A stretch of 64,000 nt of DNA from Octopus sinensis (Eukaryota), in the NCBI RefSeq assembly GCF_006345805.1, contig NC_043010.1, positions 62,186,001 through 62,250,000 on the forward strand. Direction: 5' to 3'. Numbering within the stretch: position 1 is the stretch's first letter; each line of letters begins with the position of its first letter. This document shows, in pieces, positions 12,225-61,110 of the stretch. The notes beneath the pieces were generated by a model. The model saw nothing but the letters and a program-made list of their open reading frames with translations. It was not told the DNA's origin and ran no database searches. The position numbers were made by a program, and so were the translations under genes.

Positions 12225-14693
12225 TTATGTTTTTCGATTGGAATGGAGTGAGGAGGAAATAGAGTGCGGGTGATTAGAGATAGGGTGGTGCTGTTGCTTG
12301 TGTCCGTTCGACACGGTGTTGGGTATGTTGGGGATACTGGACATGTTGGGCCAGCCAGTGCCCAAAATAGGGGGGATGGGGAAGCTGCGCGACCACAAGT
12401 AATTGTTCTCCCAGTTGGGGGGTATCTCGTGGAGGTAGGCCGGTGCCATCCAGCTGGGTGTGACCGACGGGGCCTGGAGTCGGACACTGTGATTCTTGGA
12501 GTCTCTAGGGTTCATGTGATGAAGGTTTTGTGGCTGGGAGGTCGGGTGGCTGGGGAGGATGCTGGCCATGTTGCTGTGGCTGTGGCTCCTCATGTGGGTC
12601 TGACTGGGAGCATCCGGGTGGCTTGTGCTGCTACCCTCAGTGTGTGATGGATCTCTGGATTTCAAAGAAGGGTTGTTAGTCTTAGGCGGTGGGCTCCTGC
12701 GTGTGTTGCAAGGGAACGATGGAGGAGACAGGTTCGAAGAGGACATCTCTGACCCCGACCTGTCAGCGATTTGCGGGGACGTATAGTCTTTCCCTATGTT
12801 AGATTCCTTAGAGGTGGTCAGGGCCGACGATCCAGCAGTGGCCGATGGCTTTGAATAGAGTTCACAACCAGTGCGAGTGCGTTTGTGATTGTTTAGATTG
12901 GCCCTCTGTGAGAAGCTTTTCCCACACACGTCACATTGAAAAGGTTTCTCCCCCGTGTGTATGCGAAAGTGAGTTTTCAGATTTCCACGCTGTGCAAATG
13001 TTTTGTTACACACAGTGCAATAATAAGGTTTCTCCCCAGTATGAATGCGTTCGTGATTCTGCAAACTGATTTGAAGAGTAAATGCCTTTGAACACATCGA
13101 ACACTTAAACATGTTCCCGTTATGAATACGCCTATGGTTATCCAGGTTCGTCTTCTGACTGAACGTCTTCGGACAGAGTTCACATTGATAGGGTTTCTCG
13201 CCTGTGTGTGTTCGCATGTGCAACTTCAGGTTGCCCTGCTGACTGAAGGACTTCCCACAAGTTAAACACCTAAACGGCTTCTCTCCAGTATGCGTTCTCA
13301 TGTGATTCTTCATGTTTATCTGCAAACTGAACGCTTTGGGACAAAACGAACACTTGAATGGCTTCTCACCGGTGTGAATACGTTCGTGGTTGCGGAGGAA
13401 GAAAGCATTGGCAAAGGCCTTCTTACAGAATTGACAGTAGAACATGTCTCCGGTGTGCAGGCGTTTATGGTCCTCCAAGTTGACCCGTTGACTGAACGCT
13501 TTGCCACATGTCTGACACACAAACGGTCGCTCTCCAGTATGATTCCTCATGTGGAGTTTCAAGTTTCCTTGCTGACTAAAAGCTTTGCCACATGTTAAGC
13601 ATGTGTAAGGCTTTTCCCCGGTGTGTGTCCGGTGGTGATTCTTCAGTGCCGTTTGCTGACTGAACGCTTTGGGGCAAAACCCACACAAGTACGGTTTCTC
13701 ACCTGTATGGATGCGTTCATGATTGCGTAAGTTAATTTGCAACGTGAAAGTCTTCGAACACGTCATGCAACTAAAGAGGTCACCTGTATGTATACGACAA
13801 TGGTTCTCCAAGTTGGTTCGTTGGCTGAATGCCTTCGGGCATAATTCGCATTGATAAGGCTTTTCGCCAGTGTGTGTTCTCATGTGTATCTTCAGATTCC
13901 CTTGCTGGCTGAAGGCTTTCCCACACTCGACACAGGTGAAGGGTTTCTCCCCTGAATGTATTCTCTGGTGATTCTTCAAATTAATTTGCAGGTTGAAGCT
14001 CTTGTTACAGATCTCACACGTGTAAGGTTTCTGTTGATACTCGCCCCCTGCTGTGTGGGTAAGTTCGTGGTTTTTCAAGTGGATTTGCTGAGCAAAGGCC
14101 TTCTTGCAGAAAGTGCAGAAGAAGCATTTTGCAGAGTTGCTCGAAGAAGTGGGGACATTGGGGATTAGGAGGGGCGGGATAACGCTGTTGGAAGAAGAGA
14201 CGGGAGGAGTTCGGGTCGGGTTTGAATGTGGGGTTGATTTCAAACTCGACACATTGCCAGCATCGTCTCCATTATCACTTCCGTTCATAATTGCGCTGTC
14301 AGAGTGAGGTGGAGACTGCAAAGAATGAGTTGAGCTGGAATTGAGAAGCGGATTCATGCCATGAGGTTGCTGCTGCTGCTGTTGTTGTTGTTGTATAGAA
14401 TCCAACATGTTGCTGTTGTTGTCATTGCTGTTGTTGCTGCTGCTGGCTCCGCTGTTGCCATCAGACGACATCCTCGGATTGGCCGACATCGTATGGGGAT
14501 AGCCCTTTTGGCAGAAATTACACCTACAAGACTTCCCGCCAGTGTGGCGCTGGCCCTGTTCCGCATTTGATCCATTCTCATGCTGGTTCAGCTTCAAAGA
14601 GTCTTCACCTCCGTAGAATAATCCAGGAGGATTATGTAAATCTAATCCGTATTGGTTATTGAATGGATACATTTGGTTAGATAGATTAGACAT
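12225..14693 (-). CDS. Multi-C2H2 zinc-finger transcription factor, 822 aa, single coding exon (ZNF-1 here)
   Basis: Uninterrupted ORF with 14 CxxC-x12-HxxxH fingers, mostly TGEKP-linked, and a 15th whose last His is Arg (HKRTRTGC). The N-terminus is Q/N/S-rich and the C-terminus is P/S/H-rich. Confidence 0.95.
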   Translation of the reverse strand: MSNLSNQMYPFNNQYGLDLHNPPGLFYGGEDSLKLNQHENGSNAEQGQRHTGGKSCRCNFCQKGYPHTMSANPRMSSDGNSGASSSNNSNDNNSNMLDSIQQQQQQQQQPHGMNPLLNSSSTHSLQSPPHSDSAIMNGSDNGDDAGNVSSLKSTPHSNPTRTPPVSSSNSVIPPLLIPNVPTSSSNSAKCFFCTFCKKAFAQQIHLKNHELTHTAGGEYQQKPYTCEICNKSFNLQINLKNHQRIHSGEKPFTCVECGKAFSQQGNLKIHMRTHTGEKPYQCELCPKAFSQRTNLENHCRIHTGDLFSCMTCSKTFTLQINLRNHERIHTGEKPYLCGFCPKAFSQQTALKNHHRTHTGEKPYTCLTCGKAFSQQGNLKLHMRNHTGERPFVCQTCGKAFSQRVNLEDHKRLHTGDMFYCQFCKKAFANAFFLRNHERIHTGEKPFKCSFCPKAFSLQINMKNHMRTHTGEKPFRCLTCGKSFSQQGNLKLHMRTHTGEKPYQCELCPKTFSQKTNLDNHRRIHNGNMFKCSMCSKAFTLQISLQNHERIHTGEKPYYCTVCNKTFAQRGNLKTHFRIHTGEKPFQCDVCGKSFSQRANLNNHKRTRTGCELYSKPSATAGSSALTTSKESNIGKDYTSPQIADRSGSEMSSSNLSPPSFPCNTRRSPPPKTNNPSLKSRDPSHTEGSSTSHPDAPSQTHMRSHSHSNMASILPSHPTSQPQNLHHMNPRDSKNHSVRLQAPSVTPSWMAPAYLHEIPPNWENNYLWSRSFPIPPILGTGWPNMSSIPNIPNTVSNGHKQQHHPISNHPHSISSSLHSNRKT

Positions 14694-18129: not shown

Positions 18130-19329
18130 GCACCATCTGTGAGAAAAACTATGATGCAATTCACTCTGCCAGAAATTTACAAACAACATACTATGCTGCT
18201 TGGCATTCACACCAGAGCCTCTAATACAAACATTTCAGAGTGTTTGGGTGTCAATCTGAGGGTAGTGCAATCTGAGAACAACTATCAAGGGTGATAAAAA
18301 TCCAACATCTAGTCAACATCATGGTGTTTAGAGTGATCACTAGAGATGACAACATTATGCCTCCGTTCATCTCACACAGCCTCATACACAACATGGAGGC
18401 CTACATCAAGAGCCAGGAGGAGGTAGTGCAGCCCTGGGTCAAGAGGGTGGTTGCTGGAAGACTCTCTGTCTGGCAACAGGACTCTGCACCATGCCCCACA
18501 ACCAGAAGAACCCAGTCATGGCTGTCAGACAATTTCTGTGACCACATCACCCCTAACATCTGGCCACCTAACTCCCCAGACTGCAACCCCCTTGATTATT
18601 ATGTGTGTAGGGTGCAGTTGAGCGAGAGACCAACAAAACTCCTTGTAACAAGAAAGATGAACTGAAGGCAAGGATTATGGCAGCATTCACCAACTTAAAC
18701 ATGGAGACCGTCCAGAAGAGTTGCAGGAGATTTTGAAGTCATCTTGAGGCCGTAATTGAAGCTAATGGCGATTTTATTGAATAAATTTACTCTTTAGTAC
18801 TTCAAGACATTTTAATGTAATGCTAGTAAATATATCTGTTAAAAATCTGATGTCAGTGTTATTTTCATTTTTGCGTAATTTAGATGACAATATATTCGAG
18901 TAAAGATTGTTTGCCAACATAAGATGGCAGTCCTAGTTTAGGATGAATGTTGCTGTAATTTAGCCCCAGGAGACATCATCTCCAGTGGGGTATACGACAT
19001 GATCTGTGTCCTTATATTTTCGAACAAGGGAATCTAGCATCCCCACTCAGCTCAAAACAATATCTGTGTATTGCGATTTCCTTTCATAGTTTTGAGCTGA
19101 GTGTTGGTGCGAGATTCCCTTGTTCGAAAATATAAGGACACAGATCATGTCATATAGCCAGCTGGGGACGATGCCTCCTGGGACTAAATTACAGCAACAT
19201 TCGTCCTAAACCAGGACTGCCACGTTATGTTGGCAAACAATCTTTACTCCAAAGTACTGTTGCTGAATATCTCTCGTAGTGAGATTTAAAAGTAGTAATT
19301 TCCTAACAATATATTCATTGCACCCTGTA
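18130..19329 (+). mobile_element. Decayed Tc1/mariner DD37D (maT-type) transposon, 3' part, interrupted by a fold-back element
   Basis: WQQDSAP...WPPNSPDCNPLDY has 37 residues between the second and third Asp. A frameshifted tail ...EANGDFIE* ends at about 18783, and the terminus CACCCTG-TA at 19329. Confidence 0.85.
18898..19305. mobile_element. Family I fold-back element, copy 1, with an 11-bp target duplication
   Basis: Arms 18898-19058 and 19089-19249. ACAATATATTC occurs at 18887-18897 and 19306-19316. Confidence 0.85.
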
Positions 19330-19429: not shown

Positions 19430-19770
19430 GATTTGAATTACAACCTGTCCATTTTCCGTGTTGGAGGGTTTGACTGAGGTCTGGAGGGCCAGCAGCTGTA
19501 CCAAGCTCCAATCTGATCTGACAATGTTTCTACAGCTGGATGCCCTTCCTAATGCCAACCACTTCAAGAGTGTAGTGGGTGCTTTTTATGTGCCACTGGC
19601 ACAGGAGCCAGTCAAGTGGTCCTAGCATCGATCATGTTCTGATAGTGCTTTTTACGTGTTACTGGCACAGGAGCCAGTCAGGGGGTACTGGCATCGGCCA
19701 CATTCAGATGGTGCTTTTTACGTGCCACTAGCATGGGAGCCAGTCAGGCGGACCTGGCATCGACCATATA
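19430..19770 (-). mobile_element. Family B copy with several GTGCC..GGCAC-type internal units
   Basis: Sequence similarity to the other copies. Confidence 0.75.
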
Positions 19771-24899: not shown

Positions 24900-25275
24900 G
24901 TATGTTTGCGTTTATCTATACATTTATATAATATATTATACATTTTTACATATAATATTATATATATTATATAATATATATATATTATATAATATATATA
25001 TATAGAATATATATATATTATATATAATAATATATATATTATATAATATATATATTATATAATATATATATAGAATATAATATATATATTATATAATATA
25101 TTATATATATATATATATTATATAATATATATATATAGAATATAATATATATTATATATATATTATATATATAATAATATATATATATTATATATATTAT
25201 ATAATATATATATATATATTATATATTATATATATATTATATATATAACAAAATTTTTATATATATATATTATAT

Positions 25276-25310
<35 letters not shown>

Positions 25311-25536
25311 ATATATATAATATAATATATATATTATATATATAATAAAATTTATATATATATCATGATGATGATGTGTAAGATATATATTCTATATAAT
25401 ATATATTACAAAATATGTGTATATAATATATATATATATACATACATATATAGACATATATATATCTACACACACATGTATGTAATATATGTATGAATGT
25501 ATATAAATATATATATATTATATATATATATATAAT

Positions 25537-25579
<43 letters not shown>

Positions 25580-25877: not shown

Positions 25878-26250
25878 TGATACCAGTGCCGGAGGCACGT
25901 AAGAGAACCATCCGAACGTGGATGTAGCCAGCACCGCCCGACTGGCCCCTGTGCCGGTGGCACGTAAAAAGCACCATCCGACCGTGGCCATTGCCAGCTT
26001 CGTCTGGTCCTCGTGCCGGTGGCACGTAAAAAGCACCATCCAATCGTGGCCGTTTGCCAGCCTCGTCTGGCACCTGTGCCGGTGGCACGTAAAAAGCACC
26101 CACTACACTCACGGAGTGGTTGGCGTTAGGAAGGGCATCCAGCTATAGAAACACTGCCAGATCAGACTGGGCCTGGTGCAGCCTTCTGGCTTCCCAGACC
26201 CCAGTTGAACCGTCCAACCCATGCCAGCATGGAAAGCGGACTTTAAATGA
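25878..26250 (+). mobile_element. Family B copy with four ~63-bp internal tandem units
   Basis: GTGCCGGTGGCACGTAAAAAGCACC-type units start at 25886, 25951, 26013 and 26076. Confidence 0.85.
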
Positions 26251-28400: not shown

Positions 28401-28749
28401 GAGAGGACACCAAAACAAAAAAAAGGTTATGTAATAAACTTCATTAGCTTACAGCTGTTTCTGCTATAAAATGTGGTGGACTCTCAGTTGAGTACCCAGA
28501 TAACATTCTACAGCTTCATCAGAGCCTTGAATATAAGTACACTTTATCTGGGAAAATTATGTCTTCATAACATCCAGGTGTTACAAGTGAGAAAGTCTAT
28601 GTTGATGCTTATGGGAAAGTCTGTCCAAAAGTTAAAAAAAGTATGCAAATATATGCATGTGCTTACACCGTATATCTCTGCTCTCTCTCCTTGACTGAAT
28701 GTCTGCATGAATTTTCTTTTCTTTTCATTCTGGTATGTATGTATGTGCA

Positions 28750-29596
28750 TAACTTAGTTATCATTCAGCTAGTGTTAGGAACATAAATTGTGACTAAGAT
28801 TTGGCGGAAGATTGTAATTCAAAACTTATGAAAACAAGACATTTGTACTCAGAGCCAGAACCGGTTTTAGCCAGGTTGGTATCAAAAGGGTTAAGAATTA
28901 TTTCTCTGTTATATATTTTAACCCTTTTGTTACCATATTTCTGTTGAGATGCTCTGTGTTTCTTTCAATTAATTTTAAATATAACAAAGAATTTAGTAAA
29001 ATAACTTAGTTATCATTCAGCTAGTGTTAGGAACATAAATTGTGACTAAGGTTTGGTGGAAGATTTTAATTCAAAACTTAGGAAAACAAGACATTTGTAC
29101 TACAGAGCCAGAGCCGGTTTCAGCCAGGTTGGTATCAAAAGGGTTAAGAATTATTTCTCTGTTATATATTTTAACCCTTTTGTTACCATATTTCTGTTGA
29201 GATGCTCTGTGTTTCTTTCAATTAATTTTAAATACAACAAAGAATTTAGTAAAATAACTTAGTTATCATTCAGCTAGTGTTAGGAACATAAATTGTGACT
29301 AAGATTTGGCGGAAGATTTTAATTCAAAACTTTTGAAAACCTGACATTTGTACTACAGAGCCAGAAGCAGTTTCAGGTGGGTTGGTATCAAAAGGGTTAA
29401 GAATTGTCTCTTTATTATATATTTTAACCCTTTTGTCGCCATATTTCTTTTGAATCCTCTGTGTTTCTTTCAATTAATTTTAAATAGAACAAAGAATTTA
29501 GCAAAATAAATTAGTTATCATTAAGCTATTGAAAACAAGACATTTGTACTACAGAGCCAGAGCCGGTTTCAGCCAGGTTGGTAATGAAATGGTTAA
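28750..29596. mobile_element. Tandem array of family G piggyBac-like MITEs (one partial, two full, one deleted)
   Basis: TTAACCCTTT starts at 28918, 29171 and 29424 (253-bp period), with TTAA-bounded inverted termini and a conserved 23-bp spacer. Confidence 0.9.
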
Positions 29597-31520: not shown

Positions 31521-31589
31521 TTATTTTTGTCATTTATGTCAGAAAGCCAGAATGTGTTGTTACCTGCATCAGTTATTGACTAACGAGTG

Positions 31590-32770
31590 CAGGTGACATG
31601 CATCCCGTTACGTAAACGTGAACAAAGCACCAGACAAAGGATTTGGCAAAATGGTTGGTTGATAATAAAATTATATTCGAGAAATATTGATAACACACCA
31701 CTATTTAATGACACAGTTTCATGGTTTATTCATGAAATGTCAAATTTTTGTGAAAGTCGGCTAATAAGCTGGATTAAAATGAGCTGCAGACTCACTTTCC
31801 AAATGGATGAGTCAACCGACTTTGCTGATGCAGCAGCCACAGCAGCGTCTGAACCCTGTGTTTATGAAAGTGGCATTGAAGAAGACTTGTTAATTAGCCA
31901 GACTTTTAAGAGTTATGCTGGGGTGGAATTAAATATTAATCTAATTCATTTACGGGAAGAAGAAATGAAATTTTCTTTGAAAATTTGTTTTAGAATTTGT
32001 ACCGATGGAGCAGAAGCTGTGGAAGGGGAACATTTCTGATTCTGTTACCAGAATAAAAAAGGAGAAAAAAATCAGAGCCGAATATACCGTAAATCCTCAA
32101 ATGTAATCCGCATTTTTTTCCCCAAATTTAAAGGTCAAAATCCCTTGTGCGTATTATACATGAGGTTAAAAAATGAAAAATATTTCCTAAGCAATGTCCG
32201 AGTCTCTATTCGCTGTCCGACAATGTTTATTCAGACACATTTTGTGATGTCGGGCACGAAAATACTTTAAGCTAAGCCTGAAAGCAATGAAGTCATAAAA
32301 GAATCATCCATAACTTGCAGTAAGCAACATTTATTAAACATTATTACTGTTATTTCTTTATTTTCTGCAAACAAAATGCACAAAAAAGCTACACATTTGC
32401 ATTATGTTATATATACAATAATTATAAAGGACGTTACTGTATACATTTTTACAAACCAAGGACATTATATAGACCTCCTTGACTCAAGTTAGAGAAGGGG
32501 TGCGTATTATACTCAAGGTTTAGGTTTTTCAGAGGTACAGCCCCCTAAAAATCCCCTGCATATTATACTCAAGGGTGGGCTATACTCAAGGATTTATGGT
32601 AACCACTATTGTCTTCATCATAATCTTTTGCTATTGTGGAGAAATATATGCTTCATGAGCTGAAATTAGTTGTTAAACTATGTTATAAAATATTTCAGTT
32701 TTGTATTTGGTTGGTGAGATTTTCAATGTGAACTCATGTGGTGAAAACAAATCTTGTATCTCGGGAGGGT
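31590..32770 (+). mobile_element. hAT (Buster/Charlie-like) transposase remnant, split by a MITE
   Basis: FQMDESTD...IEEDLL...ICTDGA motifs of the hAT catalytic region; transposase-like sequence appears to resume after 32601. Confidence 0.7.
32085..32601. mobile_element. pogo/Tc2-type MITE
   Basis: Termini TACCGTAAATCCTC / GGATTTATGGTA, with subterminal TTATACTCAAGG repeats. Confidence 0.75.
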
Positions 32771-37153: not shown

Positions 37154-37555
37154 CAACAAAAAATGCTGTGGGGCTGCAAGACAGACAAAAGTGGGTAATG
37201 CAAAGGGGAACTGAAAACTGTCCTAAAGGACTATAGACATGGGAAGGGTGGGGTGAGGATCACGGAGGATCGTGACTGGTCCGGGAGACTTGAGAAGTCT
37301 CCTGATGACGATGGGATCCCAAGGGAGATTTACAAGTATGGTGAGCCTCACATTCCATCTTCACTCTTTGCTTCTCTTCTGTTGGCAGGAGAACACCTGA
37401 CAGGTGAAAACACTCCAAAAGTGTCACAGTCTACAAGCACAAGGAAGATCATGCAGAGTGCACCGGCAGCAGGGAAAATCTCTCTTCTGGATAATGCTGG
37501 CAAGATTCTCTCATGTATTCTCTTCTGAGGTCTTCTATCTGATGTTGTCAACTTG

Positions 37556-37851
37556 TTCCTTCTTGAGCCATGCCTGGCTCGTAAGGGCCGGTTTCCCGGT
37601 TCCTTGGCGTATACATTCCCTACCTGGACGGGACACCGGTCCGTTGCAGATGAGCTGCAAGATGCAGGAGGAAAGAGTGAGAGAAAGTTGAGGCGAAAGA
37701 GTCAGCAGAAGTTCGCCATTACCTTCTGCCGAAGCCGCGTAGAGCTTAAGTGTTTCGCTCATAAACACACACATCGCCTGGTCTGAGATTCGAACCCGCG
37801 ATCCCTCGACTACGTGTCTGCTGCTCTAACCACTAGGCTATGTGCCTCCAC
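37556..37851 (-). mobile_element. Family J-related SINE with a 14-bp TSD, inside the LINE
   Basis: ATGTTGTCAACTTG occurs at 37542-37555 and 37852-37865; A box TAGCCTAGTGG, B box GGTTCGAATC. Confidence 0.88.
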
Positions 37852-38435
37852 ATGTTGTCAACTTGGTTATGGCTGAGTCCCAGGATGGATTTCAACCAGA
37901 GAGAAGCACTTCTGACATATTTGGGACCCGTCTTCTTGAAATGTGTCACGAACAGCAGAGAGACATGTTACGTCTTCATTTAATGTAAGAAAGGGTGTTT
38001 GACATGGTCAACCATCCTATGTTGTGGGACCTGCTTCAGAAGTTTGGGTATCCATTAATTTTTCTCCTGATTGTCCAGAAGTCGCATGATGGCATGCAAA
38101 AGAAAATGACACTCAGCGGTGAAGCCTCCGAGAATCCTTTGATGTCCAAGTGGGAGCAAAACAAGGATGTGTCCTTGCTCCTGTACTGTTTAATACTTAC
38201 CTGGTGGCTGTAACCCTTATTTCCAGGAGAAAGTCCACCAAAGATGAAATTCATATCAGGTATTGTTATGATCGCAGCATCTTTAACAGTCGTTGCCTGG
38301 AAGCCAAATCAAAATCCTCTCAACCACTGCCTATAAGGTGATAATTTAGCTGCAACATCTCATACCTCTGCCTCTCTTCAACACATGATGAACTCAATAA
38401 ATGGTGCCTACTCTTTGCTCGGTCTTCAAGTGAAT

Positions 38436-38645
38436 CATCATCATCATCATTTAACGTCTGCTTTCCATGCTAGCATGGGTTGGACGATTTGACTGAGGTC
38501 TGGTGAACCAGACTCCAATCTGATCTGGCAGAGTTTCTACAGCTGGATGCCCTTCCTAATGCCAACCACTCCGAGAGTGTAGTGGGTGCCAGTCAAGCGG
38601 TACTGGCAACGGCCACACTCAAATGGTGCTTTTTATGTGCCACAT
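38436..38645 (-). mobile_element. Family B tail copy
   Basis: Sequence similarity to the other copies. Confidence 0.8.
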
Positions 38646-39419
38646 CAATAAACTGAAGACTCCAGCCAGCCATCCGGTACCCATCCTACCCCACTCAGCC
38701 TGTTCTTATTGATGATGCTTCTCTGCTGCAGGCAGACTCATTCTGCTATCATGGACGCAGAATCTCTAACACTGGACGCCTTGATGAGGAAATACTCCGT
38801 CGAAACAACTCAGCCTCTGCATCTTTTGGGAGACTCAGCAAATGAGAGTCTTTCAGAACAAGAACCTTTGGAGCAAGTTCAAAAATCTCAATTTATCGAG
38901 CTGCCTGTGTATCCACCCACCTGCATGGGTCTAAGTGCTGGACCCCTTATCGGCCAACTGGAAAAGTTCCATATCAGATCATTCTAAAGTATCCATGATT
39001 TCAAGTGGAAGGACAAGGTGCCTCATACTGAAGGGCTCCTGAGGGCTGTGATCTACAGCATTGAGGCCTGCATCCTTCATTGTCTTCTCCACAGAGTTGG
39101 TCATGTTGATTCAGATGTCAGGTAACAAACTCTCAAAGATGGTCCTCTTCAGTGAGATCAAGACTGGAAGAAGGCCCTCATGGATGTCCAAAACTTTTTT
39201 TCGAATCTCAAGTCATCTTCTCATTTTGTGGTATCCCTCCAAATCAGTTGGAGGCCATGGCTGTTAGTTGGGGGGCATGGAGGTCCATGCGTGATGCTGG
39301 AATAGACTACTTTGAAACTGAACTCAGGAGACAGCATGAAGAAAGGAGGAGACATCATCATCAACCCCCTGCGGCTGTTGTTTGGGGTCACAGTCAATGC
39401 TCTCAGTACCTCAGGATTT

Positions 39420-39752
39420 TCCTTTCTCTTTGGACACTAAACTTTGCTTGCGAAGACCTGTTGGGGCAAGTGAAATCGAAATCAAAATTGACCCAAATTC
39501 GATGACTGGCACCCGTGCCAGTGGAGTGCTAACAGCTCCATCTGAGCGGGATCATTGCCAGAGCAGCTGTCTGGCTCCTGTGCCAGTGGCACATAAAAAG
39601 CACCATTGGCATTAGGAAGGGTATCCAGCTGTAGAAACTCTGCCAGATCAGATTGGAGCCTGGTGCAGCCATCTGGTTCGCTAGTCCTCAGTCAAATCGT
39701 CCAACCCATGCTGGCATAGAAAGCGGACGTTAAACGATGATGATGATGATGT
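39420..39752 (+). mobile_element. Family B copy, longer variant
   Basis: Starts with GAAGACCTGTTGGGGCAAGTGA, similar to the LINE stop region, and ends in (GAT)n. Confidence 0.8.
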
Positions 39753-40729
39753 TTCTGTCTTGTCAGCCATGAGTAAGAATGTGTCGGAGGCAGAGGAAGA
39801 TGATTGTCATCATCGTAGATGGACTGTCATAAGCAAGAGTAAGCATTTATGTCTGTTCCCCACCACCGTTTGACAGCCAGTGTTGGTTTGTTTACGTCCC
39901 CGTAACTTAGCAGTTCGGCAAGAAAAACCGGTAGAATAAGTACTGGGGATCAATTCATTCGACTAAAACTTCAAGGCCCTGCGGAGTATGGGCCGCAATT
40001 TAATGACTGAAACAAGTAGAAAATAAAAGGTGTGTGTGTGCGTGCGAGTGTGTGTGTGTCTGTGTGTGCGTGTTTGTGCGTGCGGTGTCTTATTGAATAA
40101 GTATAAACGTGTGTGTGTGTGTGTGTTTAAGGAAATTCCTTTCTCTGCCAGAAGCAACATCGCAAAATAAAGAGAGGCAGGACGAAGAAAGAGGGAGGGG
40201 GTGATAAAGGAAAGAGAGAGAAAGGAAGACTCAAGCTAGACAATACGGTGTGTATGGCTGTGTGTGTGTGTGTGTGTGTAGACAATTAAAGAGTCGTCTG
40301 AAGGAAGCCTTAAGAAGGTCAGCCAGGCTTCCGTCTACTTCTCCTCTTTGCCAAACACGTTCAGTCAGTCGTCTTCCCGACGTGTGTCTGACGTGCAGCC
40401 TGCTCATACCTATGTGTGTGTGTGTGTGTGTGAGTAGATTTTTACTTCTGTGCGTGTGTGTGGATCGGTGTATTTCTGTGTGTCTGTGTAAGTGTATCTA
40501 TAACTGTGTATTTCTTTAGGTATGCGAGTGTATGTTTCTGTGTGTGTGTGTGTTTCTCTATGTGTGTGTGTGTGAGTATATTTTTACTTCTGTGTGTGTG
40601 TATATGTATTTCTGTGTGTGTCTGTGTAAGTGTATCTATAACTGTGTGTGTCTGTGTATTTCTTTAGGTATATGAGTGTATGTTTCTGTGTGTGTAAGTA
40701 TTTCTCTATGTGTGTATGTTCATGGCGAA

Positions 40730-41640
40730 CAAGCGCGCGAGAGAGAAAGCTAAATGATTAGAGATAGAGAGATGTACAGAGAGATAGAGAGATGTACAGA
40801 GAGAGAGAGAGACAGAGTGTGGGAAGAAAGTAGATAGGTATAGATGTAGGAGAGAGTGACCGAGAAATGGAGGGAAGAGATAAGAGGGAAAGAACAGAGA
40901 GAGAGAGTGTGTGTGTGTGTGTGTGACAAATACACAAGAGATGAAGAGAGGGGGTAGGGAATACGTGAGTAAAGTGAAATTAAGAGAAAGAGATACAGGT
41001 AAGAGATTAAGAGAGGAGGAGGGACAAACAAAAGAAGCCACAAAATAAGGAGTAGGAGGAAAGTATACAATGAGAGGAAAAGTGTGAGTGTAGAGGTAAG
41101 AGGAGGATAAGGAAGAGGAAACAGAATGACAGTGTGTGTGAGTAACAAGTAGAGAGGATCGGAGGAGGAAGGGAGAGGAGATAAGTAGTGAGGGGAAGGT
41201 ATGAAATATAAGGGAATAGAGAGAGAGATAGACTGAAACTGAGAGAAAGAGAGTAAGTTGTCGATGGGGAAAGGATAGATATCTGAGAGACGGAGAGAAA
41301 TAGATAGAGAAATGTGAGGAGAAGAGAGAGAGAGAGAGAGAGAGAAATAATATGGCAAAGAGATAAAGAGATGGAAAGCGAGAAGAGAGAAAAAGTGGTA
41401 AAAAAAAGAAATGGAAGAAGAGGAGAGTGAAGGGGAAATAGACAGGAAAAGGTGTGGGAAGACGGAAAGAGAGAGGAGCAGGAAGAGGATGAGGCGAGTG
41501 AGAGAGCGAATACAAAAATGAGTGAGAAACAATAAGGAGAGAAAATAAATGATAGAGCGAAAGAGGCAGGGAGAGAGAGAGAGAGGTGAGAGGATAAGTA
41601 TGGAAGAAAGGAGGGAACATAATGGTGGAGGATAGAGCTA
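40730..41640. repeat. ~900-bp purine-rich (GA) strand-asymmetric low-complexity tract
   Basis: Directly visible; it produces the long L/S/F artefact ORFs. Confidence 0.9.
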
Positions 41641-43140
41641 TAAAATAAGATTGTACACATACACCACATTCAACACACAGATGTGTGTGTGTAGATGGAG
41701 GTGTATATATCTGTCTTTCCTCAAAGACCTAGAGATAAGAAGTTTTTTCCCCCCCATTTCCTTCTCCCCGTTTCTCGCTCATTAAATTCTTAAGTTTTCA
41801 TTTAGCCACAGCTCAGCGAAACTTCGAAGTCACTATCAAGAAAGAGAGAGAGGGAGGGAGGGAGGGAAAGAATGAACAGAGAGAAAAGGGGTTTGAGGTG
41901 GAGTAAAAAGGAGGGGGGAAAGGTTTGTGTGAAAGATGGAGAGGGGAAGGAAACGGGAAGAGGGAAGAGAGATTCTTTTACTCAATTTCAGTAATTCAAC
42001 TGTGGCCATGATGGAGCACCGCATCCTGGGTCGAGAGAGAGAGAGAGAGGTGTGAGCGGTAATGGTGTTGGTGATAATGATGATGATGGTGGTGGTGGTG
42101 GTGGTGGTGGTAGTGGTGGCGGCGGTAGTGATGGATGCCTGAAGTGGAAGGTGAAACAATATATTTTCAAATAAAAGGGAAGTAAAATGTATATGGATCT
42201 CGGTGGCTTTCCCAACCTCAGCATCTGGCGGAAAGGGAAGCTGGCGACCCCAATCACGCCGATATAGCAATAGCATAAGACACACATTGTCGACACCGCC
42301 ATTACACATACGAACACACACGCATAAACACACATATACACACACACACACACATCGTCAATACCAACATCACGTATAGACCCACACATATACATATTTT
42401 CAAACATCCCAGACGACACACACACATATACAGAGAGACACACACACATATACACATCCTCATACAATCATAAGCATAAAATACACATCGCAAATACTCA
42501 TTGCTATACACACGTATAAACATAGACTTCTCCACTAAAAATACACACATACACACATAAATACATACATACATACATACACACACATACATACACACAT
42601 TCATACACACATACATACATACACACACACGGCCAACCTCGTCGCCATCACGAGGACCCAGGCTGCTAGAAGTGCAACTAACGTGATATATAAATGCAGG
42701 CGTACATCACTCGATGTGCAGCAGTGTGCATCATGTGCTATTAATGCTGTCACTAGGTAGGAATTTAAATAATTAACCACAGAGCTGCAGCAATCCACTA
42801 AGTATATTGCATAAATGCATGTACGTACGTGTGCGAGTGTCTGTGTGTATATATGTGTATATATATATATATATATATACACATACATATATATATATAT
42901 ATATATGTATGTATACATACATCCACATACATATATATACACAGATGCACATATGTATATATATTTATACATACATGTATATGTGTGTGTGTATGTATGT
43001 GTATATATATTATATATATATATATACATACACATATATATAAACATACATACATACAACACACACATTTATATATATACATACATACATATATATATAT
43101 ATATATGTGTGTAAGTATGTCTGTATGTATATATAAGTGC

Positions 43141-50438: not shown

Positions 50439-53400
50439 CTATAGCTGCCACAGATAATCACTCATCGGTGGAAACTCTTCGATTGTCTTGTTACCAGAAT
50501 TGGCTGCTGACTTTTGTTCTCCAAAATGCATCTTTTTCCCTCCAATATGATGCCCATTGTGCAGTTTCTTGTGCCGTTTCAAGGTGTCCCTTCGAGCGAA
50601 TTGTTTTGTACACAACTCACATGTATAAGGTTTCTCCCCCGTGTGAGTTCTTCGATGCAACTGTAAGTAATGTCGTTGTGCAAACGGCTTGAAACAAATG
50701 TCACACTCGAACGGTTTCTCCCCCGTGTGGGTCCGGTGGTGCAGCCTCAACGAGTTTCTCTGAGCGAACTGCTTCAGACAAATGTCACACTGAAAGGGCT
50801 TCTCCCCCGTGTGGGTCCTGCGATGCACTTGAAGATAGTGGTTCTGAGCAAACGGCTTCAGGCAAACATCGCAGTGGTAGCGTTTTTTAGGCATGTGTGT
50901 GCGTTTGTGGATTTGGAGCTTGTATCTCTGAGCGAATTTCTTCAGACAAATTTCACAGTGGTATGGCTTTTCACCCGTGTGAGTCCTGCGGTGGATCTGC
51001 AGCGTGGTCTTGCGGGCAAATTTTTGGATACAGAAATCACACTGGAACGGTTTCTCTCCCGTGTGGGTTCGTTTATGAATCTGTAAATATTGTCTCTGAG
51101 CAAACTGTTTGAAGCACGTGTCGCACTGATAGGGTTTCTCCCCCGTGTGGGTCCGTCGATGAACCTGCAGCGAATTGCGTTGGGAGAATCGTTTGCCGCA
51201 AGCTTCACACTCAAATGGTTTCTCTCCAGTATGAGTCCTTCGGTGAATGTGCAAATAGTGACTCTGAGCAAACTGTTTGAGACAGATCTCGCAATGGTGC
51301 CGTTTCTTTGGGCTGTGCGTCCTCATATGAATCTGAAGCTTGTACTTTTGAGCAAAATCTTTCGAACAGACTTCACATTGGTACGGACGTTCTCCAGTAT
51401 GTGTTCGTCGATGGATTTGTAGTGTGGTTTTCCGTGCAAACTTTTGAATACAGAAATCGCATTGAAATGGTTTCTCCCCCGTGTGAGTTCGCTTGTGAAT
51501 TTCCAGGTAATGTTTCTGAGCAAAAGGTTTAAAACAAACATCGCACTGCAGTAGCTTCTCCCCTGTGTGAATTCTCCGATGGATCTGCAGGTAATAGCGC
51601 TGAGCAAACTGCTTAAGACAGAATTCACATTGGTATTTTTTTTTCAAGACGTGTGACTTCTTGTGGGCTCGTAGTTTATCACTTTGAGCAAACAGTCGAA
51701 GACAGATCTCACACTGGTAGGGTTTCTCCCCAGTATGAGTTCTTCGGTGGATCTGTAACGTGTCCCTGCGAGAAAACTTCTGAATACAAAAGTCACACTG
51801 GTATGGTTTTTCCCCAGTGTGGGTCCTCCGATGGATCTGTAGGTAATAACGTTGGGCAAACTGTTTCAAACAAATATCACATTGGTAGGTCTTGTCGTCA
51901 GGTCTTGAACTCCTCGGAGCTCTCGGTTTTGGCGTTTTCGGTATAGATGGTAGATAGTTCAAGGTTCCAGCGGGAGGGACTGGTGGAGAGCTAACATAAG
52001 GGACGGTACCTGCCATAGAGGACTGGTTGGGGGAGAGGGAGCTAGACATTGTTGACATGCTGTGTGACATCATCGTCGGTCCGTGATCAGAGTTGTTCAG
52101 TGAGATGTTATCGCTGGTTCCAGTGGAGTCGACGCTCGGATTCGACTCCATGTGGTTCTTCCGGTGTCGCTGCATGGTATCTCTGCGCGAAAATTGCTTG
52201 AAACAAATGTCACAGTGGAAAGCTTTACCTCCGACATGAGTCAGACGATGCGCTTGCATCATGTCCTCATCGGGAAATTTCTTACCACAGTAATCACAAA
52301 ACAGCTGCTTCTCCTTCATTTTCTCCTTTCGATGATAGTGTGGTTGTTGTTGTTGTTGTTGCTGTGGCTGCTGCTGCTGCTGTTGTTGTTGTTGTTGTGG
52401 CTGTTGTTGCTGCTGACTGGTTGATGTGGGTAACGACTTGCCGATACTGTACTGTTTGTGGCCGATGTCATTTTGATATGAAAGAGACTTCTCATGATTG
52501 TTGTTGCTGCTGTACGATTTCTCAGCAGATACTTGTTGTTGTTGCTGCTGCTGCTGTTGTTGCTGTTGTTGTTGTTGCTGCTGCTGCTGTTGTTGCTGTT
52601 GTTGTTGCTTGGAAGTTATACCTGAGCTTATAACAGGTGCGGTTGGGGACAATATCCGATCAGGTGTGGAAGCCGAAGTGGGCGTGGTGGCAGTAGGTGG
52701 TGTGGAGACAGGCAGGTAACACGGCTGGGAGTACTGACTCGTGTAGATGTTGTTGGGGAACATGGTCTCGGAGAGGTGAGACATCTGTTGGTGGGGTGGG
52801 GACACCATGGAACTGTGCATGTGGGTCGGGTTGAACTGCGATTTGCCCGTCGGACTGCTACTGCTGCCACCACTGACCCCAGTTTTGTCCGAAGACAACA
52901 GCGACATCCGGTCGGATTGGATGCCCGTGTGAGACTGGGAGTACTTACTGGTCAAGTCCTCACGGTGTCCTGAGCTGGACTTTTCACTGACGTGTGGCAG
53001 CCGGTGGCCAGCTGATATGTCTGGCGAATGGACGTACGGTTTACTGCTGATCTCACTGCCAGGGTTCAATTTCTCAAGGATGTCGGACATTCTTTGAGAA
53101 TGCATGCTCTGGGAGTGCGAATATTGTTTGCCAGACATCTCACTGTGGCTCGACTTCTCCGCTATACGGGACATCCGCTGCTGCTGTTGCTGCTGCTGAT
53201 GATGATGTAGGCTGTGCGAATGAGAATATTGTTTACCAGATAATTGGGAATGGCTGGACTTTTCAGGCAAATGGGACAGAGAGTGTTGTTGTTGTTGCTG
53301 TTGTTGTTGTTGCAATTGTAGGCTGTGGGAATACTGCTTGCCGGAGATCTCCGCGTGGTGCATTGATTTCTCCACAAGGTGTGACATCCTGATCTGGGTT

Positions 53401-54570: not shown

Positions 54571-54784
54571 GACTGGCTCCCATGCCAGTTGCACGTCAAA
54601 AGCACCATTCGAGCGTGATCGTTACCAGCATCGCCTTACCGGTGGCATGTGAGAAACATTTGAGCGAGGTCATTGCCAGTGCCACAAGGCTGGCTCCTCT
54701 GCAGGTGGCATGTAAAAAAACACCATTCGAGCGTGGCCGTTACCAGTACCGCCTGACTGGCCCTCATGCTGGTGGCATGTAAAA

Positions 54785-55050
54785 ACACCGGTTGTCAAGC
54801 GATGGTGGAGAGACGAATACAGGAACACACACACATTATTTTTATATATATATATATATATAAAGAATAAAAGAGAGTAAAGGGTATGCGATGGGCTTCT
54901 TTCAGTTTCCGTCTACCAAATCCACTCACAGGGCTTTGGTCGGCCCGAGGCTATAGTAGAAGACACTTGCCCAAGGTGCCATGCAATGGGACTGAACCTG
55001 GAGCCATGTGGTTGGTAAGCAAGCTACTTACCACACACCCACTCCTGCAC
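54785..55050 (-). mobile_element. Family A SINE, 5' portion
   Basis: Sequence similarity to the other copies. Confidence 0.8.
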
Positions 55051-56640: not shown

Positions 56641-57549
56641 TGTGTGTGTGTGTGTGTGTGCATGCATGTGCATGTGTGTGACCCCAGTAGCTGTTTGGGC
56701 CCAGATCGAATCTGATCCAGTAACACCTATGATAAAAAACTGTGACCACCCCTTCATTTTAAAGGCATGCTTAGGGTTCCACTAATGTACTCTTTTGTCA
56801 TTGAAGATAGTAGGAATTGTTTTGAGGAATATTCGACTGCTACTTCTAGCAGGAGGAGTTACTTTGCAAAGGCCTCCTTCATTGGCTCAATGAAGTTCCA
56901 GTCTCCAGTTATCCAATATATGCCTTCACCATTACTACACACAGGATACAAACACACATCTAGGACTTAGGACTTAGCCAGAGATCAAAGGGCATGCATT
57001 GTCCAAGTTCTCCAAAAGTTCTCAAAATCCAAGGTGTGTTTGAGGCAACAGGGCAAGACTACAACCTAAAGTCCAGAATGCCACCCCAACCCACAAGGAG
57101 TTAACCATAGGGAGAGGAGTCAGGTATCACCTTCACCACCTTTGTCAGTCTGTTTGTCCATGCTGGAATGGGTTGAAGGGGTCTTGTCGCTCCTCAAAGT
57201 TTGTAACATCTGACACACACAGCAAAAGACAAACTGGTTAACTTTGTGATTGTGGCTGCCTCACAGCCATACACTGCACGTATTTTATTGCTCCTCAACC
57301 AATAATAGAGAGGTTGTCCTATACATGAAGAACGATCCTTTCTACTCTAGGCACAAGGCCTGAAATTTGGGATTGGGGGATAGTCCATTATGTCAGCCCC
57401 AATTTATCAACTCCAAATGGAAGAAAGGCAAAGTCAACCTCAGCAGAATTTGAACTCAGAACATAGCAGCAGACGAAAAACTGCTAAGCATTTTGCCTGG
57501 CCTTCTAACGATTCTGCTAGATAGCTGCCTTACATACAAAAAGGATAAT

Positions 57550-57819
57550 TAGAAAATTACTATTTTTAAATCTCACAATGTGAGATATTCAGCAACAGTA
57601 CTTTGGAGTAAAGATTGTTTGCCAACATAATATGGCAGCCCTTGTTTAAGATAAATAATTTAGCCCTGGGAGACATTGTCTCCAGATGGCTATTAGACAC
57701 GAAAATATGACACAGATCGTGTCGTATAGGCAGTTAGAGACGATGTCTCCTGGGTCTAAATTACAGCAACATTAGTCCTAAACCAGGACTGCCATATTAT
57801 GTTGGCAAACAATTTTTAC
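57550..57819. mobile_element. Family I fold-back element, copy 2, with a 15-bp target duplication (1 mismatch)
   Basis: TACAAAAAGGATAAT at 57535-57549 versus TACAAAAAGAATAAT at 57820-57834. Confidence 0.8.
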
Positions 57820-58682
57820 TACAAAAAGAATAATCTCTAACTGTGGAATTATTGTTTTCTTACATGGTGAGTTGACAATGCAACGTGTGGCGTTCATGCC
57901 TCACCTGGCCATTCCATTTTTTGACAAGGTTCTTTCAGTTGAATGCCCTTCCTATCATAAACCCCATTACAGAAAGAACTGTGTACATTTTATCAAGGCG
58001 CCGGCACTTAGCATACTCATATATTGTTAAATCCCATTGCACAGCATTCTGGTGACTTTAGGCTGACCAGTGCCTTGTGTGAGAAAATTGGTCAACGGAA
58101 ATTGTGTGCAAGTCCATTCGTTCAGATTCTGTTCTTGAGAAGTGGTTTCTATCCACTGCCCAGTTTAACACCTGGATCACCAGGCTCCTGGCAAATATGA
58201 AAGCCAAGATTCCTGTCTGTGAATAAATTCTTTTCCATCAGTTACAGGGACAACTCCTTGTCCCCATGGAATTTCACTGAAAGTAAATTAAAAGAATCAC
58301 AGTTGGTGTTGACGATATTTGTTTTAATACGTACCTTGTAAATTGAGTTGTTAGGCAGTACACAATAATTGTGAGAGCAATTGGACCATCGAGGGATGTG
58401 AGTAGGGGGGCAGAGGGACTTTAGGGAACTGCCCTAAAAATAGAAAGAAACAGAAAACAAACATTAAATGAGCAGTAAACTTTTCCCAACGAAATAGTTT
58501 AAAAAACAAATGGTGGACAACAAAGACTTGGTAAAACGCTGGGAAAAATGAGATTCTCTCTTTAGTTATGTCCCTTTACATGTTGAACTTAACTCTGGCT
58601 TTCATTCCTACTGAAATCGATGAAAGTAGCACCTGTCATATACTGGGGAGATTTATTTCATGAGGGTCATGGCTGGCAGAAA

Positions 58683-59170
58683 CATCATCATTTAGCATCT
58701 GCTTCCCATGCTGGCATGGGTTGGACAGTTTGACGGGAACTGGTAAGGCAGAGAGCTGCATCAAGTTCCTGTCTAATCTGGCATCGACTCTATGGCCAGA
58801 TGCCTTTCCTAACACCAACCACGTCAAGAAGTGTAACGGGTGCTTTTTACGTGCCACGAGCACGGGTGCTTTACGTGCCACTAGCACGGGTGCCTTTATG
58901 TGCCACTGACAGAGGTGCGTTTTATGTGTCACCTGCACAGGAGCTTTTACGTGTCACTGGCATAGGTACTTTCATGTGTCAGCGGCACGTGTGCCACTGA
59001 CACGACACTGGCATAGTTCACAACTATGATTTCACATGGCTTGATGAGTCTTCTCGAACACAGCATACCACCAAAGATCTTGGTCATTTTGTCATCGCCT
59101 CCGTGAGGTCCAACATTCGAAGATCATGCTTCACCACCTTGTCCCATGTCTTCCTCTACCACAGGGTCCC
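58683..59170 (-). mobile_element. RTE 3' fragment plus family B tail, containing a ~25-bp tandem array
   Basis: The KTWDKVVKHDLR-type ORF end lies at 59100-59170; the array spans 58838-59005. Confidence 0.8.
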
Positions 59171-60904
59171 TCCACAGAGATTGAACCTAGAATATCAGGG
59201 GAAAAAAATGCCTATCGATTATTTAGTTATGATACTTTATGGTCTGAGTTCACACTTTGGCAAGATCAACTTTGCTTTTCACCTTCCTTGGGGGTCATTA
59301 ACAGGAAGCAAATCCCAGTATAAATGCTTGTTACCACAACATCCGGTTGAGCAATATTTAGGAACTGGAATTCGAGCAAAAATTTATGGAAGCCCATTGT
59401 CTACCATAAACATTCTTATCATTTATACCTGTTTTTTCCATACAGGCCCGAGTTGGATGAGGCATTACTGCCTGTAACATCTTGCATACCAAGGAAACCA
59501 GGTAACTCTTTTGTCAAGAATGCCTTATAATAATGCAGACTGGCTGGGTTTTTCCATGTTACTTGCGCAAGAGAAGTTATGAGAAGAGAAAATGTCTCCC
59601 TTTATATTTGAAATAACATCTCTCTTAGATGGGTAACTTGCGATGCAGCTTGCAAAGTGCACATCTCATTTGTTAAGTTCTGCCAATGTAGTTGAAGGAA
59701 AGCAAATCACTAACAGGACGAGCATCTCCCCACCTGCATCAGTTCTTATTCAGACCCACCGACCTCCAACGAGGTTTGACCCATGAAGCGAGTTGTGGAG
59801 TTCATCTTCTTCGAATACTCCAGATATTAGAGAGGTTGACTACTCCATCAAATTTTAAACAGAGTTACTGCCCCTCCTAGAAGGGGGGGGACGGCCGCGA
59901 ACTCAATCCGCAATTTCATTTTGAGAAGTATCTTCAGCTGAACGCCCTTGCCTTGAGTTTATTACCAAACTAGAAAGGAGTGGGGGGCCATATTCACAGT
60001 GTCTTTGGGCCAATTCATCTCTATCATAATTATGCATACATATCGGCGTGCATAATTATGCATACATATCGGCGTATTAATGTCCAGTTTCCACGCTTGC
60101 TTGTGTTGGACGGATTTTGTTGAGGCAGATTTTCTGTTGCCAAGGATCCACGCTTATTTCCAGGCAAGGAAATATTTTCCGATGGCCAGACGTAGTTTTG
60201 CAGAATATTGAAAATGAACGGCACTTGCTGTATGACAACGACAAATCATTCTATAATTATCATGTGATATCAAGACAAGGATACAGAAAGTCATACATAC
60301 ATAGAAACACACACACAAACATACATTTATGATGGGCTTCTTTCAGTTTCCATCTACAACGTCCACTCACAAGGACTTGGTCAGTCTAAAGCCATAGTTG
60401 AAGACACCTGGATCTGTAATGTGTGTTTGTGTGTGTAACAACAACATCGTCAACATTCAACGTCTGTTTCCCATACTGACGGTTTCACAGCAACTGGCGA
60501 GGCTGGGGATCGCACCAGGTCTCAACGTTGGTTTTCGCTTGGTTTCTACACCCCGATGCCCTTCCTAACGCCAACCACATTTATAGAGTGTACTGGATGC
60601 GTTTTATTTGATACCAGCACCCACACCAATGCACTTTACGTGGGACCTTGGTTTTAGGATATCGATTCTGTTGTGGTGAGCACTTGGCACTAGCAAGGGC
60701 ATCCAGTCATAGAAACCGTGCCAAATCAGACTGGAACTTGCTGCAGCTTTCCGGCTTACCGGTTTCATTCAAACCGTTTGACCCATGCCAGCATAGAAAG
60801 CTGACACTAAACGATGATGATGATAAAGTGATAGTACGTTGTCAACTTAATGTGTCAGTCCCGTAAAAGGGAAGAATGCTACTGTTATTTAGCCCTAGGA
60901 AACA

Positions 60905-61110
60905 CTGTTTCCTCTGGCCCCTGTGCCGGTGGCACGTAAAAAGCACCCACTACACTCATGGAGTGGTTGGCGTTAGGAAGAAGGGCATCCAGCTGTAGAA
61001 ACTCTGCCAGATCAGATTGGAGCCTGGTGCAGCCTCCTGGCTTCCCAGACCCCAGTTGAACCATCCAATCCATGCTAGCATGGAAAACGGACGTTAAACG
61101 ATGATGATAT
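60905..61110 (+). mobile_element. Family B tail copy
   Basis: Sequence similarity to the other copies. Confidence 0.85.

What the first reader, a model, noticed from the sequence alone, without database searches (positions are those of the whole stretch)
18887..19316. Asymmetric fold-back element that appears to move like a retroposon (variable 11- and 15-bp TSDs)
Seen: copy 1 (18898-19305) has ~160-bp arms and a 30-nt loop plus a ~55-bp unique extension at one end. Copy 2 (57550-57819) is in the opposite orientation with shorter arms. Both end at the same terminus (GTAATTTYCTA), and their inverted arms stop within 2 nt of each other, but the TSDs are 11 and 15 bp. Established: cut-and-paste transposons make near-fixed-length TSDs and need both termini, whereas target-primed reverse transcription gives variable TSDs. 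Inference: a hairpin-RNA retroposon with no tRNA head and no poly(A) or simple-repeat tail.
Basis: partly seen in the sequence, partly recalled or inferred. Interest (0 to 1): 0.72.

Follow-up and report, generated by a model that had tools for sequence, protein, structure and literature searches.

The report
Lopsided hairpin mobile element in octopus
Two copies of a short non-coding mobile DNA element from an octopus genome fold into a long hairpin with an extra 56-base tail at one end, and their insertion footprints look more like RNA-copied than cut-and-paste elements, though two copies cannot settle it.

Summary
The window is Octopus sinensis chromosome CM016872.1.

- **Copy 1** (18898-19305, +) has two 164-nt arms that are 90% alike, a 24-nt loop and a 56-nt non-inverted tail. 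It is flanked by an exact 11-bp duplication.
- **Empty site for copy 1.** Two other copies of the mariner-like element it landed in carry that 11-mer once, with both flanks contiguous. The insertion and its duplication are therefore real.
- **Copy 2** (57550-57819, -) is the same element with about 138 nt missing from the hairpin tip. It lies in a SINE's A/T-rich tail. Its flanking repeat is 14/15, or 12/13 if the ends are placed as in copy 1. It cannot be read as 11 bp.
- **Ends.** The two outer ends are not inverted repeats of each other.
- **Tail.** It forms its own stem-loop in both copies.
- **Absent features.** I found no tRNA-like head, ribozyme or Rfam match.
- **Arms.** The four arms differ in a star-like way, so each copy was a near-perfect hairpin when it inserted.
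- **Spread.** The family also occurs in O. bimaculoides.

I could not obtain more copies: 107 kb of other octopus DNA held none. The retroposon reading is the best fit at about 0.45 but is unproven. A foldback DNA transposon without matching ends is the main rival.

The parts
18887..18897 (+). Left target-site duplication of copy 1 (ACAATATATTC)
   Evidence: Exact 11-bp direct repeat with 19306-19316. It occurs once in the paralogous mariner ends of L005 and L006.
18898..19061 (+). Copy 1, distal arm. It starts GAGTAAAGATTGTTTGCC and forms the outer end without a tail.
   Evidence: Inverted repeat I1. It is 147/164 identical to the reverse complement of the proximal arm. It is paired in the fold.
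19062..19085 (+). Copy 1, hairpin loop (24 nt)
19086..19249 (+). Copy 1, proximal arm (ends ...GGCAAACAATCTTTACTC)
19250..19305 (+). Copy 1, 56-nt non-inverted tail with its own stem-loop (core ATCTC / GAGAT). It ends ...TAGTAATTTCCTA.
   Evidence: It aligns with the tail of copy 2. The local stem-loop appears in the folds. It has no significant match elsewhere in the DNA held.
19306..19316 (+). Right target-site duplication of copy 1 (ACAATATATTC)
57535..57549 (-). Flanking direct repeat of copy 2 at the tail side (TACAAAAAGGATAAT). It lies in the A/T-rich tail of a SINE.
   Evidence: 14/15 match to 57820-57834. Paralogous SINE copies end ...CCTTA followed by (ATA)n at this point.
57550..57605 (-). 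Copy 2, 56-nt tail (reverse complement of ...CAAAGTACTG...TAGTAATTTTCTA)
57606..57702 (-). Copy 2, proximal arm, shortened at the tip
57703..57716 (-). Copy 2, present loop. It was created by an internal deletion of about 138 nt relative to copy 1.
57717..57819 (-). Copy 2, distal arm. The outer end is GTAAAAATTG, or TAGTAAAAATTG if 57820-57821 belong to the element.
57820..57834 (-). Flanking direct repeat of copy 2 at the distal-arm side (TACAAAAAGAATAAT)
60826..60917 (+). Old fragment of one arm, about 71% identical. It begins at the arm's outer end, abuts the (GAT)n tail of one SINE and is cut off by another SINE at 60918.
   Evidence: blastn; nhmmer E = 1e-21, with the fragment itself in the model; sequence.

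Best explanation
This is a non-autonomous, non-coding mobile element of octopuses. Its transcript would be a long hairpin of about 350 nt followed by a 56-nt single-stranded tail that carries a small stem-loop.

The most likely route of copying is target-primed reverse transcription by the enzymes of a LINE or Penelope-like element that recognise the tail. On this model the enzyme nicks an A/T-rich target and the nick primes cDNA synthesis from the tail end. Synthesis runs through both arms. A second, staggered nick 11-15 bp away produces a target-site duplication of variable length.

Shown:
- The element is mobile.
- The exact ends of both copies.
- The 11-bp duplication of copy 1.
- The unequal duplication lengths.
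- The lack of terminal inverted repeats.
- The conserved stem-loop in the tail.

Inferred:
- The RNA intermediate.
- The orientation, with the tail as the 3' end.
- The identity of the helper enzyme.
- How the element is transcribed.
For: 1. Copy 1 is an insertion. Paralogous mariner 3' ends in L005 and L006 run ...GAC(G/A)ACAATnnAT(T/C)C-ATTGCACC without interruption and carry the 11-mer once.
2. The duplications differ in length. Copy 1 has 11 bp exact. Copy 2 has 12/13 with the copy-1 ends, or 14/15 if its distal end is 2 nt shorter. No placement gives 11 bp. Such lengths are usual for LINE-type staggered nicks. They are longer than those of the DDE superfamilies I know of (established knowledge).
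3. The two outer ends show no inverted similarity above shuffles: 1996 and 1989 of 2000 shuffles scored as well. A transposase that bound the arms would be expected to cut inside the tail.
4. The tail is the best-kept part. It differs at 5 of 56 positions between the copies, while like arms are 87% identical between copies. It folds into a stem-loop followed by about 8 free nucleotides in both copies. This is the layout of the 3' ends recognised by 'stringent' LINEs.
5. Both targets are A/T-rich: a mariner end and a SINE tail.
6. Octopus genomes hold many recently active RTE, Dong-R4 and Penelope-like families (PMC13282606).
Against: - Only two complete copies could be studied.
- No LINE or Penelope-like element with this tail was found in the roughly 190 kb of DNA held.
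- No 5'-truncated copy was seen.
- There is no poly(A) or microsatellite tail.
- There is no tRNA, 5S or 7SL head.
- TTTT runs on both strands, within about 190 nt of either end (read from the sequence), would stop polymerase III.
- A near-perfect 164-bp RNA duplex is a poor reverse-transcription template and a substrate for Dicer and ADAR.
- The thymine-stretch signature of RTE-mobilised short retroposons (PMC6007223) is not seen at either site.
- The deletion at the hairpin tip of copy 2 is what DNA palindromes suffer and says nothing about RNA.
Confidence: 0.45

Rival explanations
1. A non-autonomous DNA transposon of the foldback or MITE type, perhaps of the Mutator/Phantom group, moved by cut-and-paste. 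The arms would be long inverted repeats that bind the transposase. The 56-nt tail would be an asymmetric terminal segment.
For: - Nearly the whole element is a long inverted repeat.
- The distal end starts with GAG, which from memory resembles maize Mu ends. This is a lead, not a test.
- An 11-bp duplication lies at the upper edge of what I recall for Mutator-like elements.
- Tm1, a Mutator/Foldback family, has different 7-bp motifs outside its inverted repeats and 8-10 bp duplications (PMC3169594).
- Octopus vulgaris has Mutator families.
Against: - The outer ends share no inverted similarity.
- The asymmetric segment is 56 nt here against 7 nt in Tm1.
- The duplication of copy 2 is 13-15 bp and cannot be read as 11 bp.
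- The arms hold no tandem subrepeats.
- No transposase-bearing relative was seen.
Confidence: 0.3
2. A retroposon whose RNA template holds only the loop, one arm and the tail. The second arm is made anew at each insertion, when the cDNA snaps back and copies itself.
For: The four arms differ in a star-like way. Among 104 aligned columns there are 0 arm-specific and 1 copy-specific shared differences. Each copy therefore started as a near-perfect hairpin, as this model predicts.
Against: Snap-back synthesis has no reason to stop at the arm-tail boundary, yet both copies stop within 2 nt of it. A burst from a young master explains the star-like pattern equally well.
Confidence: 0.07
3. Not transposition by any element-encoded or LINE enzyme. 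Instead, hairpin DNA was captured at staggered chromosome breaks, or the two loci are related by another rearrangement.
For: Unequal flanking repeats and the lack of recognisable end signals are compatible with repair-mediated capture.
Against: Two unrelated sites carry the same element with the same two ends to within 2 nt. A third fragment starts at the same arm end. The family is also present in O. bimaculoides.
Confidence: 0.08
4. The flanking repeats are chance matches and the hairpins are not insertions.
For: The window is rich in simple repeats. Exact abutting repeats of 11 bp or more occurred in 0.34% of random placements.
Against: Paralogous empty sites in L005 and L006 show the single 11-mer with both flanks contiguous. 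Two independent copies both have abutting repeats.
Confidence: 0.02

Closest known systems
Foldback / Mutator-Phantom elements such as Tm1 of root-knot nematodes (PMC3169594) and Drosophila FB
   Same: Non-coding members consist almost wholly of long inverted repeats. They are flanked by target-site duplications. Tm1 carries different short motifs at its two outer ends.
   Different: Tm1 duplications are 8-10 bp, mostly 9, against 11 and 13-15 bp here. Tm1 arms are built of 13-15-bp tandem units, and there are none here. The asymmetric segment here is 56 nt, sits at one end only, and has its own stem-loop.
Short retroposons mobilised by 'stringent' LINEs, for example RTE-related Au-like SINEs (PMC6007223)
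   Same: Short and non-coding. No poly(A) is needed. The 3' tail is recognised by structure and sequence. Duplications vary in length.
   Different: There is no polymerase III head. The body is a 164-bp-stem hairpin. No partner LINE is shown. The thymine-stretch target signature is not seen.
Inverted structures made by reverse transcriptases (L1 twin priming, inverted partial copies next to Penelope-like elements)
   Same: Inverted sequence within one retro-insertion, with a variable duplication.
   Different: Those inversions arise anew at each insertion with variable junctions. Here the junctions are the same in both copies, so the hairpin is inherited. No hammerhead ribozyme is present.
MITEs (miniature inverted-repeat transposable elements)
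   Same: A few hundred bases long, non-coding, hairpin-forming, dispersed.
   Different: MITE inverted repeats reach both outer ends, and the duplication length is fixed for a family. Neither holds here.

Membership tests
MITE / class II non-autonomous element | Terminal inverted repeats at both outermost ends, next to the duplication | tested here: not met
   One end is the arm terminus and the other is a 56-nt tail. Alignment of the two ends scores no better than shuffles.
MITE / class II non-autonomous element | Duplication of one fixed length | tested here: not met
   11 bp against 13-15 bp, from two copies only.
MITE / class II non-autonomous element | An autonomous element with a transposase gene and the same ends | not testable with these tools
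   No whole octopus genome could be searched. None was seen in about 190 kb of DNA held.
Foldback / Mutator-Phantom (Tm1-like) | 8-10-bp duplication | tested here: not met
   11 and 13-15 bp here. The Tm1 values come from PMC3169594.
Foldback / Mutator-Phantom (Tm1-like) | Composite arms built of short tandem units | tested here: not met
   Tandem Repeats Finder reports no array inside 18898-19305 or 57550-57819.
SINE | Head derived from tRNA, 7SL or 5S RNA with a polymerase III promoter | tested here: not met
   ARAGORN found no tRNA. Rfam gave nothing at gathering scores, and only weak generic miRNA-hairpin matches at E up to 10. TTTT runs occur on both strands.
SINE | 3' tail shared with a partner LINE | not testable with these tools
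   The tail has no other significant match in the DNA held. The genome itself could not be searched.
SINE | Duplications of variable length | tested here: met
   11 against 13-15 bp, from two copies only.
SINE | A-rich or simple-repeat 3' end | tested here: not met
   Both copies end ...TAGTAATTT(C/T)CTA.
Helitron | No duplication; 5'-TC and CTRR-3' ends; insertion between A and T | tested here: not met
   The 11-bp duplication is proven by empty sites. The 5' end is GAG.
Retrozyme / Penelope-like non-autonomous element | Hammerhead ribozyme motif | tested here: not met
   No hammerhead family matched, even at E up to 10.

The most novel reading that the evidence does not exclude
A retroposon that is essentially one long RNA hairpin plus a short recognition tail. 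It has no polymerase III head and no A-tail, and is spread by an octopus LINE or Penelope-like reverse transcriptase. It would scatter ready-made double-stranded RNA structures, which are substrates for editing and small-RNA pathways, through cephalopod genes.
Probability: 0.4. Interest if true: 0.6.

Novelty: new variant of a known kind. Interest (0 to 1): 0.42.

Why it matters
If the retroposon reading is right, reverse transcriptases can propagate a template that is almost entirely a perfect duplex. It would also add a class of short retroposon defined by a hairpin body rather than a polymerase III head.

Cephalopods edit double-stranded RNA on a very large scale. A mobile element that drops a 160-bp duplex into introns and untranslated regions could create editing or small-RNA substrates. 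One copy already contributes the last 34 residues of an O. bimaculoides gene model.

If the element is instead a DNA transposon, it would be a foldback family with non-matching ends and unusually long duplications. That would be of interest mainly for repeat annotation, because MITE finders that require inverted repeats at both ends should miss it.

Tried and rejected
- **Proteins translated from the element.** I searched the protein collection with a six-frame translation of both copies, hoping that short reading frames called on octopus contigs would lead to other copies. There was one hit only, the C-terminus of O. bimaculoides A0A0L8FIX1. Its gene is not on record for retrieval.
- **Metagenome scans.** Two exact-pattern scans found nothing.
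- **Sampling more octopus DNA.** I fetched loci through zinc-finger and mariner proteins: L002, L003, L004, L005 and L007, 107 kb in all. No further copy turned up by blastn or nhmmer.
- **Orthologous O. vulgaris locus.** The two zinc-finger proteins of the window are on record only for O. sinensis. Cluster look-ups failed.
- **The zinc-finger protein search** was swamped by vertebrate zinc fingers and wasted.
- **Rfam** gave nothing.
- **Literature.** A full-text sequence search and two supplement searches gave nothing relevant.
- **A-to-G editing signature.** There are too few substitutions among the arms to judge.
- **Shared TTAGA motif.** It lies just 5' of the left duplication in both copies. 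With two copies and a 1-nt shift it is too weak to use.
- **Helitron reading.** The tail does have a hairpin followed by a CTA-A end, but the proven duplication rules a Helitron out.
- **Survey of SINE duplications in the window.** I began this to compare target signatures and dropped it because the SINE 5' ends are ill-defined.

Full report
**Where the window comes from.** The 822-residue zinc-finger reading frame at 12225-14693 (-) is encoded exactly by Octopus sinensis assembly GCA_006345805.1, chromosome CM016872.1. The 1131-residue one at 50439-53834 (-) is encoded there too. From the coordinates, the window corresponds to about 62,186,001-62,250,000 of that record. It is eukaryotic DNA full of microsatellites and SINEs.

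**Anatomy of copy 1.** The element is 18898-19305, 408 bp.
- The distal arm 18898-19061 and the proximal arm 19086-19249 are 164 nt each. They are 147/164 identical when one is reverse-complemented.
- They enclose a 24-nt loop.
- A 56-nt tail follows (19250-19305). It is not part of the inverted repeat and ends ...TAGTAATTTCCTA.
- As RNA the element folds at -262.8 kcal/mol, against -99.7 ± 5.2 for shuffles.
- The tail forms a separate small stem-loop.
- ACAATATATTC abuts both ends exactly.

**Anatomy of copy 2.** The element is 57550-57819 in the opposite orientation.
- Aligned with copy 1, it has the same tail. The tails differ at 5 of 56 positions.
- It has the same outer arm sequence.
- It lacks about 138 nt around the hairpin tip and has an 8-nt gap.
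- It folds at -124.1 kcal/mol, z = -15.4.
- It is flanked by TACAAAAAGGATAAT and TACAAAAAGAATAAT, a 14/15 match.

**A third piece.** Positions 60826-60917 are an arm fragment about 71% identical to the arms. It starts at the arm's outer end, lies against a SINE tail, and is cut off by another SINE. It gives no duplication.

**Is it an insertion?** Copy 1 sits in the 3' end of a mariner-like remnant. The transposase-like frame runs to about 18790. A paralogous copy in O. vulgaris (L005) and a more distant one on an ENA contig (L006) read straight through the site...AATGTAGACGACAATTCATTC-ACCACATC... and ...AATTTAGACAACAATCCATCC-ATTGCACC... Each has one copy of the 11-mer, and both flanks are contiguous. 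This is a paralogous empty site, so the insertion and its 11-bp duplication are real. Copy 2 lies in the A/T-rich tail of a SINE. The other copies of that SINE end ...CCTTA followed by (ATA)n. In random placements within this window, exact abutting repeats of 11 bp or more occurred 68 times in 20000.

**Are the duplication lengths really different?** Both proximal arms and the distal arm of copy 1 end in GAGTAAAG. The distal arm of copy 2 reads (TA)GTAAAA. There are two readings:
- If copy 2 has the same ends as copy 1, with G changed to T, its duplication is 13 bp (12/13).
- If its distal end is 2 nt shorter, the duplication is 15 bp (14/15).

An 11-bp reading would need 4 extra bases at one end of copy 2. 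The empty site shows that copy 1 has no such bases. The lengths therefore differ, though this rests on two copies.

**The ends.** The first 25 nt of one end and the reverse complement of the other align no better than shuffled sequence. 1996 and 1989 of 2000 shuffles did as well. The element therefore has no terminal inverted repeat in the strict sense. The inverted repeat reaches the very end on one side only.

**History of the arms.** Among 104 columns shared by all four arms there are:
- 71 invariant columns;
- 25 columns in which a single arm differs from the other three;
- 0 differences specific to an arm type and 1 specific to a copy.

All four arms thus descend independently from one sequence, and each copy was a near-perfect hairpin when it inserted. 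The arms of copy 1 are 10.4% apart. O. sinensis and O. vulgaris differ by 2.66% in aligned non-coding DNA, so the insertion is several times older than that split. In keeping with this, the last 34 residues of an O. bimaculoides gene model (A0A0L8FIX1) are 85% identical to a translation of the distal arm and loop.

**What it is not.**
- No tRNA was found.
- No Rfam family matched at gathering scores. At E up to 10 there were only weak generic miRNA-hairpin matches, and no hammerhead ribozyme.
- There are no tandem subrepeats in the arms.
- There is no reading frame longer than 48 residues.
- It is not a Helitron, since the duplication is proven.

**Weighing the mechanisms.** Retroposition by target-primed reverse transcription fits four things:
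- the unequal and long duplications;
- the absence of matching ends;
- the A/T-rich targets;
- a conserved tail with a stem-loop and a short free 3' end, which is the layout recognised by LINEs that need a specific 3' end.

Octopus genomes have many recently active RTE, Dong-R4 and Penelope-like families (PMC13282606).

Several things count against it:
- no partner with this tail was seen in the DNA held;
- there are no truncated copies;
- there is no polymerase III head;
- T4 runs lie on both strands;
- the thymine-stretch signature of RTE-mobilised elements (PMC6007223) is absent;
- a 164-bp perfect RNA duplex is an awkward template.

The main rival is a foldback DNA transposon. Tm1 of root-knot nematodes shows that such elements can carry different short motifs outside their inverted repeats (PMC3169594). 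However, its duplications are 8-10 bp and its asymmetric motifs are 7 bp, against 11-15 bp and 56 nt here.

A variant in which the second arm is remade by snap-back at each insertion would explain the star-like arms. It would not explain why both copies stop at the arm-tail boundary.

I put retroposition at about 0.45, a DNA transposon at about 0.3, and the rest on the snap-back variant, repair-mediated capture and chance.

**Limits.** The decisive test is a census of duplication lengths and ends over all genomic copies. It could not be run, because no tool searches octopus genomes by nucleotide sequence. The 107 kb of additional octopus DNA reached through protein look-ups held no copy.

Noticed in passing
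window 18286-18897 and 19317-about 19328: Remnant of a mariner-like transposon with a C-terminal transposase frame containing stops and a frameshift. It is split by copy 1 close to its 3' end. Paralogues are 85% identical in O. vulgaris (L005) and 78% identical on ENA contig ERZ21867824:ctg118202l (L006), whose organism is unknown.
   Followed up: partly
window 18875-18886 versus 19295-19305: The 7 bases GTAATTT lie just upstream of the left duplication of copy 1 (GTAATTTAGATG|) and also just before the right one, at the element's own 3' end (GTAATTTCCTA|). The paralogues show that the first is mariner sequence. Copy 2 shows no such match. This may be chance, or homology between the target and the element's end.
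   Followed up: partly
window 12225-14693 (-) and 50439-53834 (-): Two intron-less C2H2 zinc-finger reading frames of 822 and 1131 residues, with long glutamine runs. Both fold-back copies lie within a few kb of them.
   Followed up: partly
window 19579-19769, 25942-26100, 54657-54785, 58836-58988: Short tandem arrays of 25- to 67-bp units sharing the motif GTGCTTTTTACGTGCCACTGGCAC, the same sequence as the 5' part of an abundant SINE with a (GAT)n tail. The SINE head seems to vary in unit number.
   Followed up: no
window 28749-29528: A 253-bp unit repeated 3.1 times at 93% identity. Not identified.
   Followed up: no
window 40001-42000: A block with very strong G-over-C skew (0.546), made of GT- and GA-rich low-complexity repeats.
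   Followed up: no
window 24913-25578: A (TA)n tract of about 666 bp. The surrounding 2 kb has the lowest G+C of the window (0.273).
   Followed up: no
window 37253-39505 (+) and 31587-32039 (+): Broken reading frames that look, by eye only, like a LINE reverse-transcriptase region and a hAT-type transposase fragment. Pfam gave no match to the separate frames.
   Followed up: partly
L002 versus L003: Orthologous 22-kb stretches of O. sinensis and O. vulgaris differ by 2.66% substitutions plus many indels, yet encode an identical 687-residue zinc-finger protein (P0022).
   Followed up: partly
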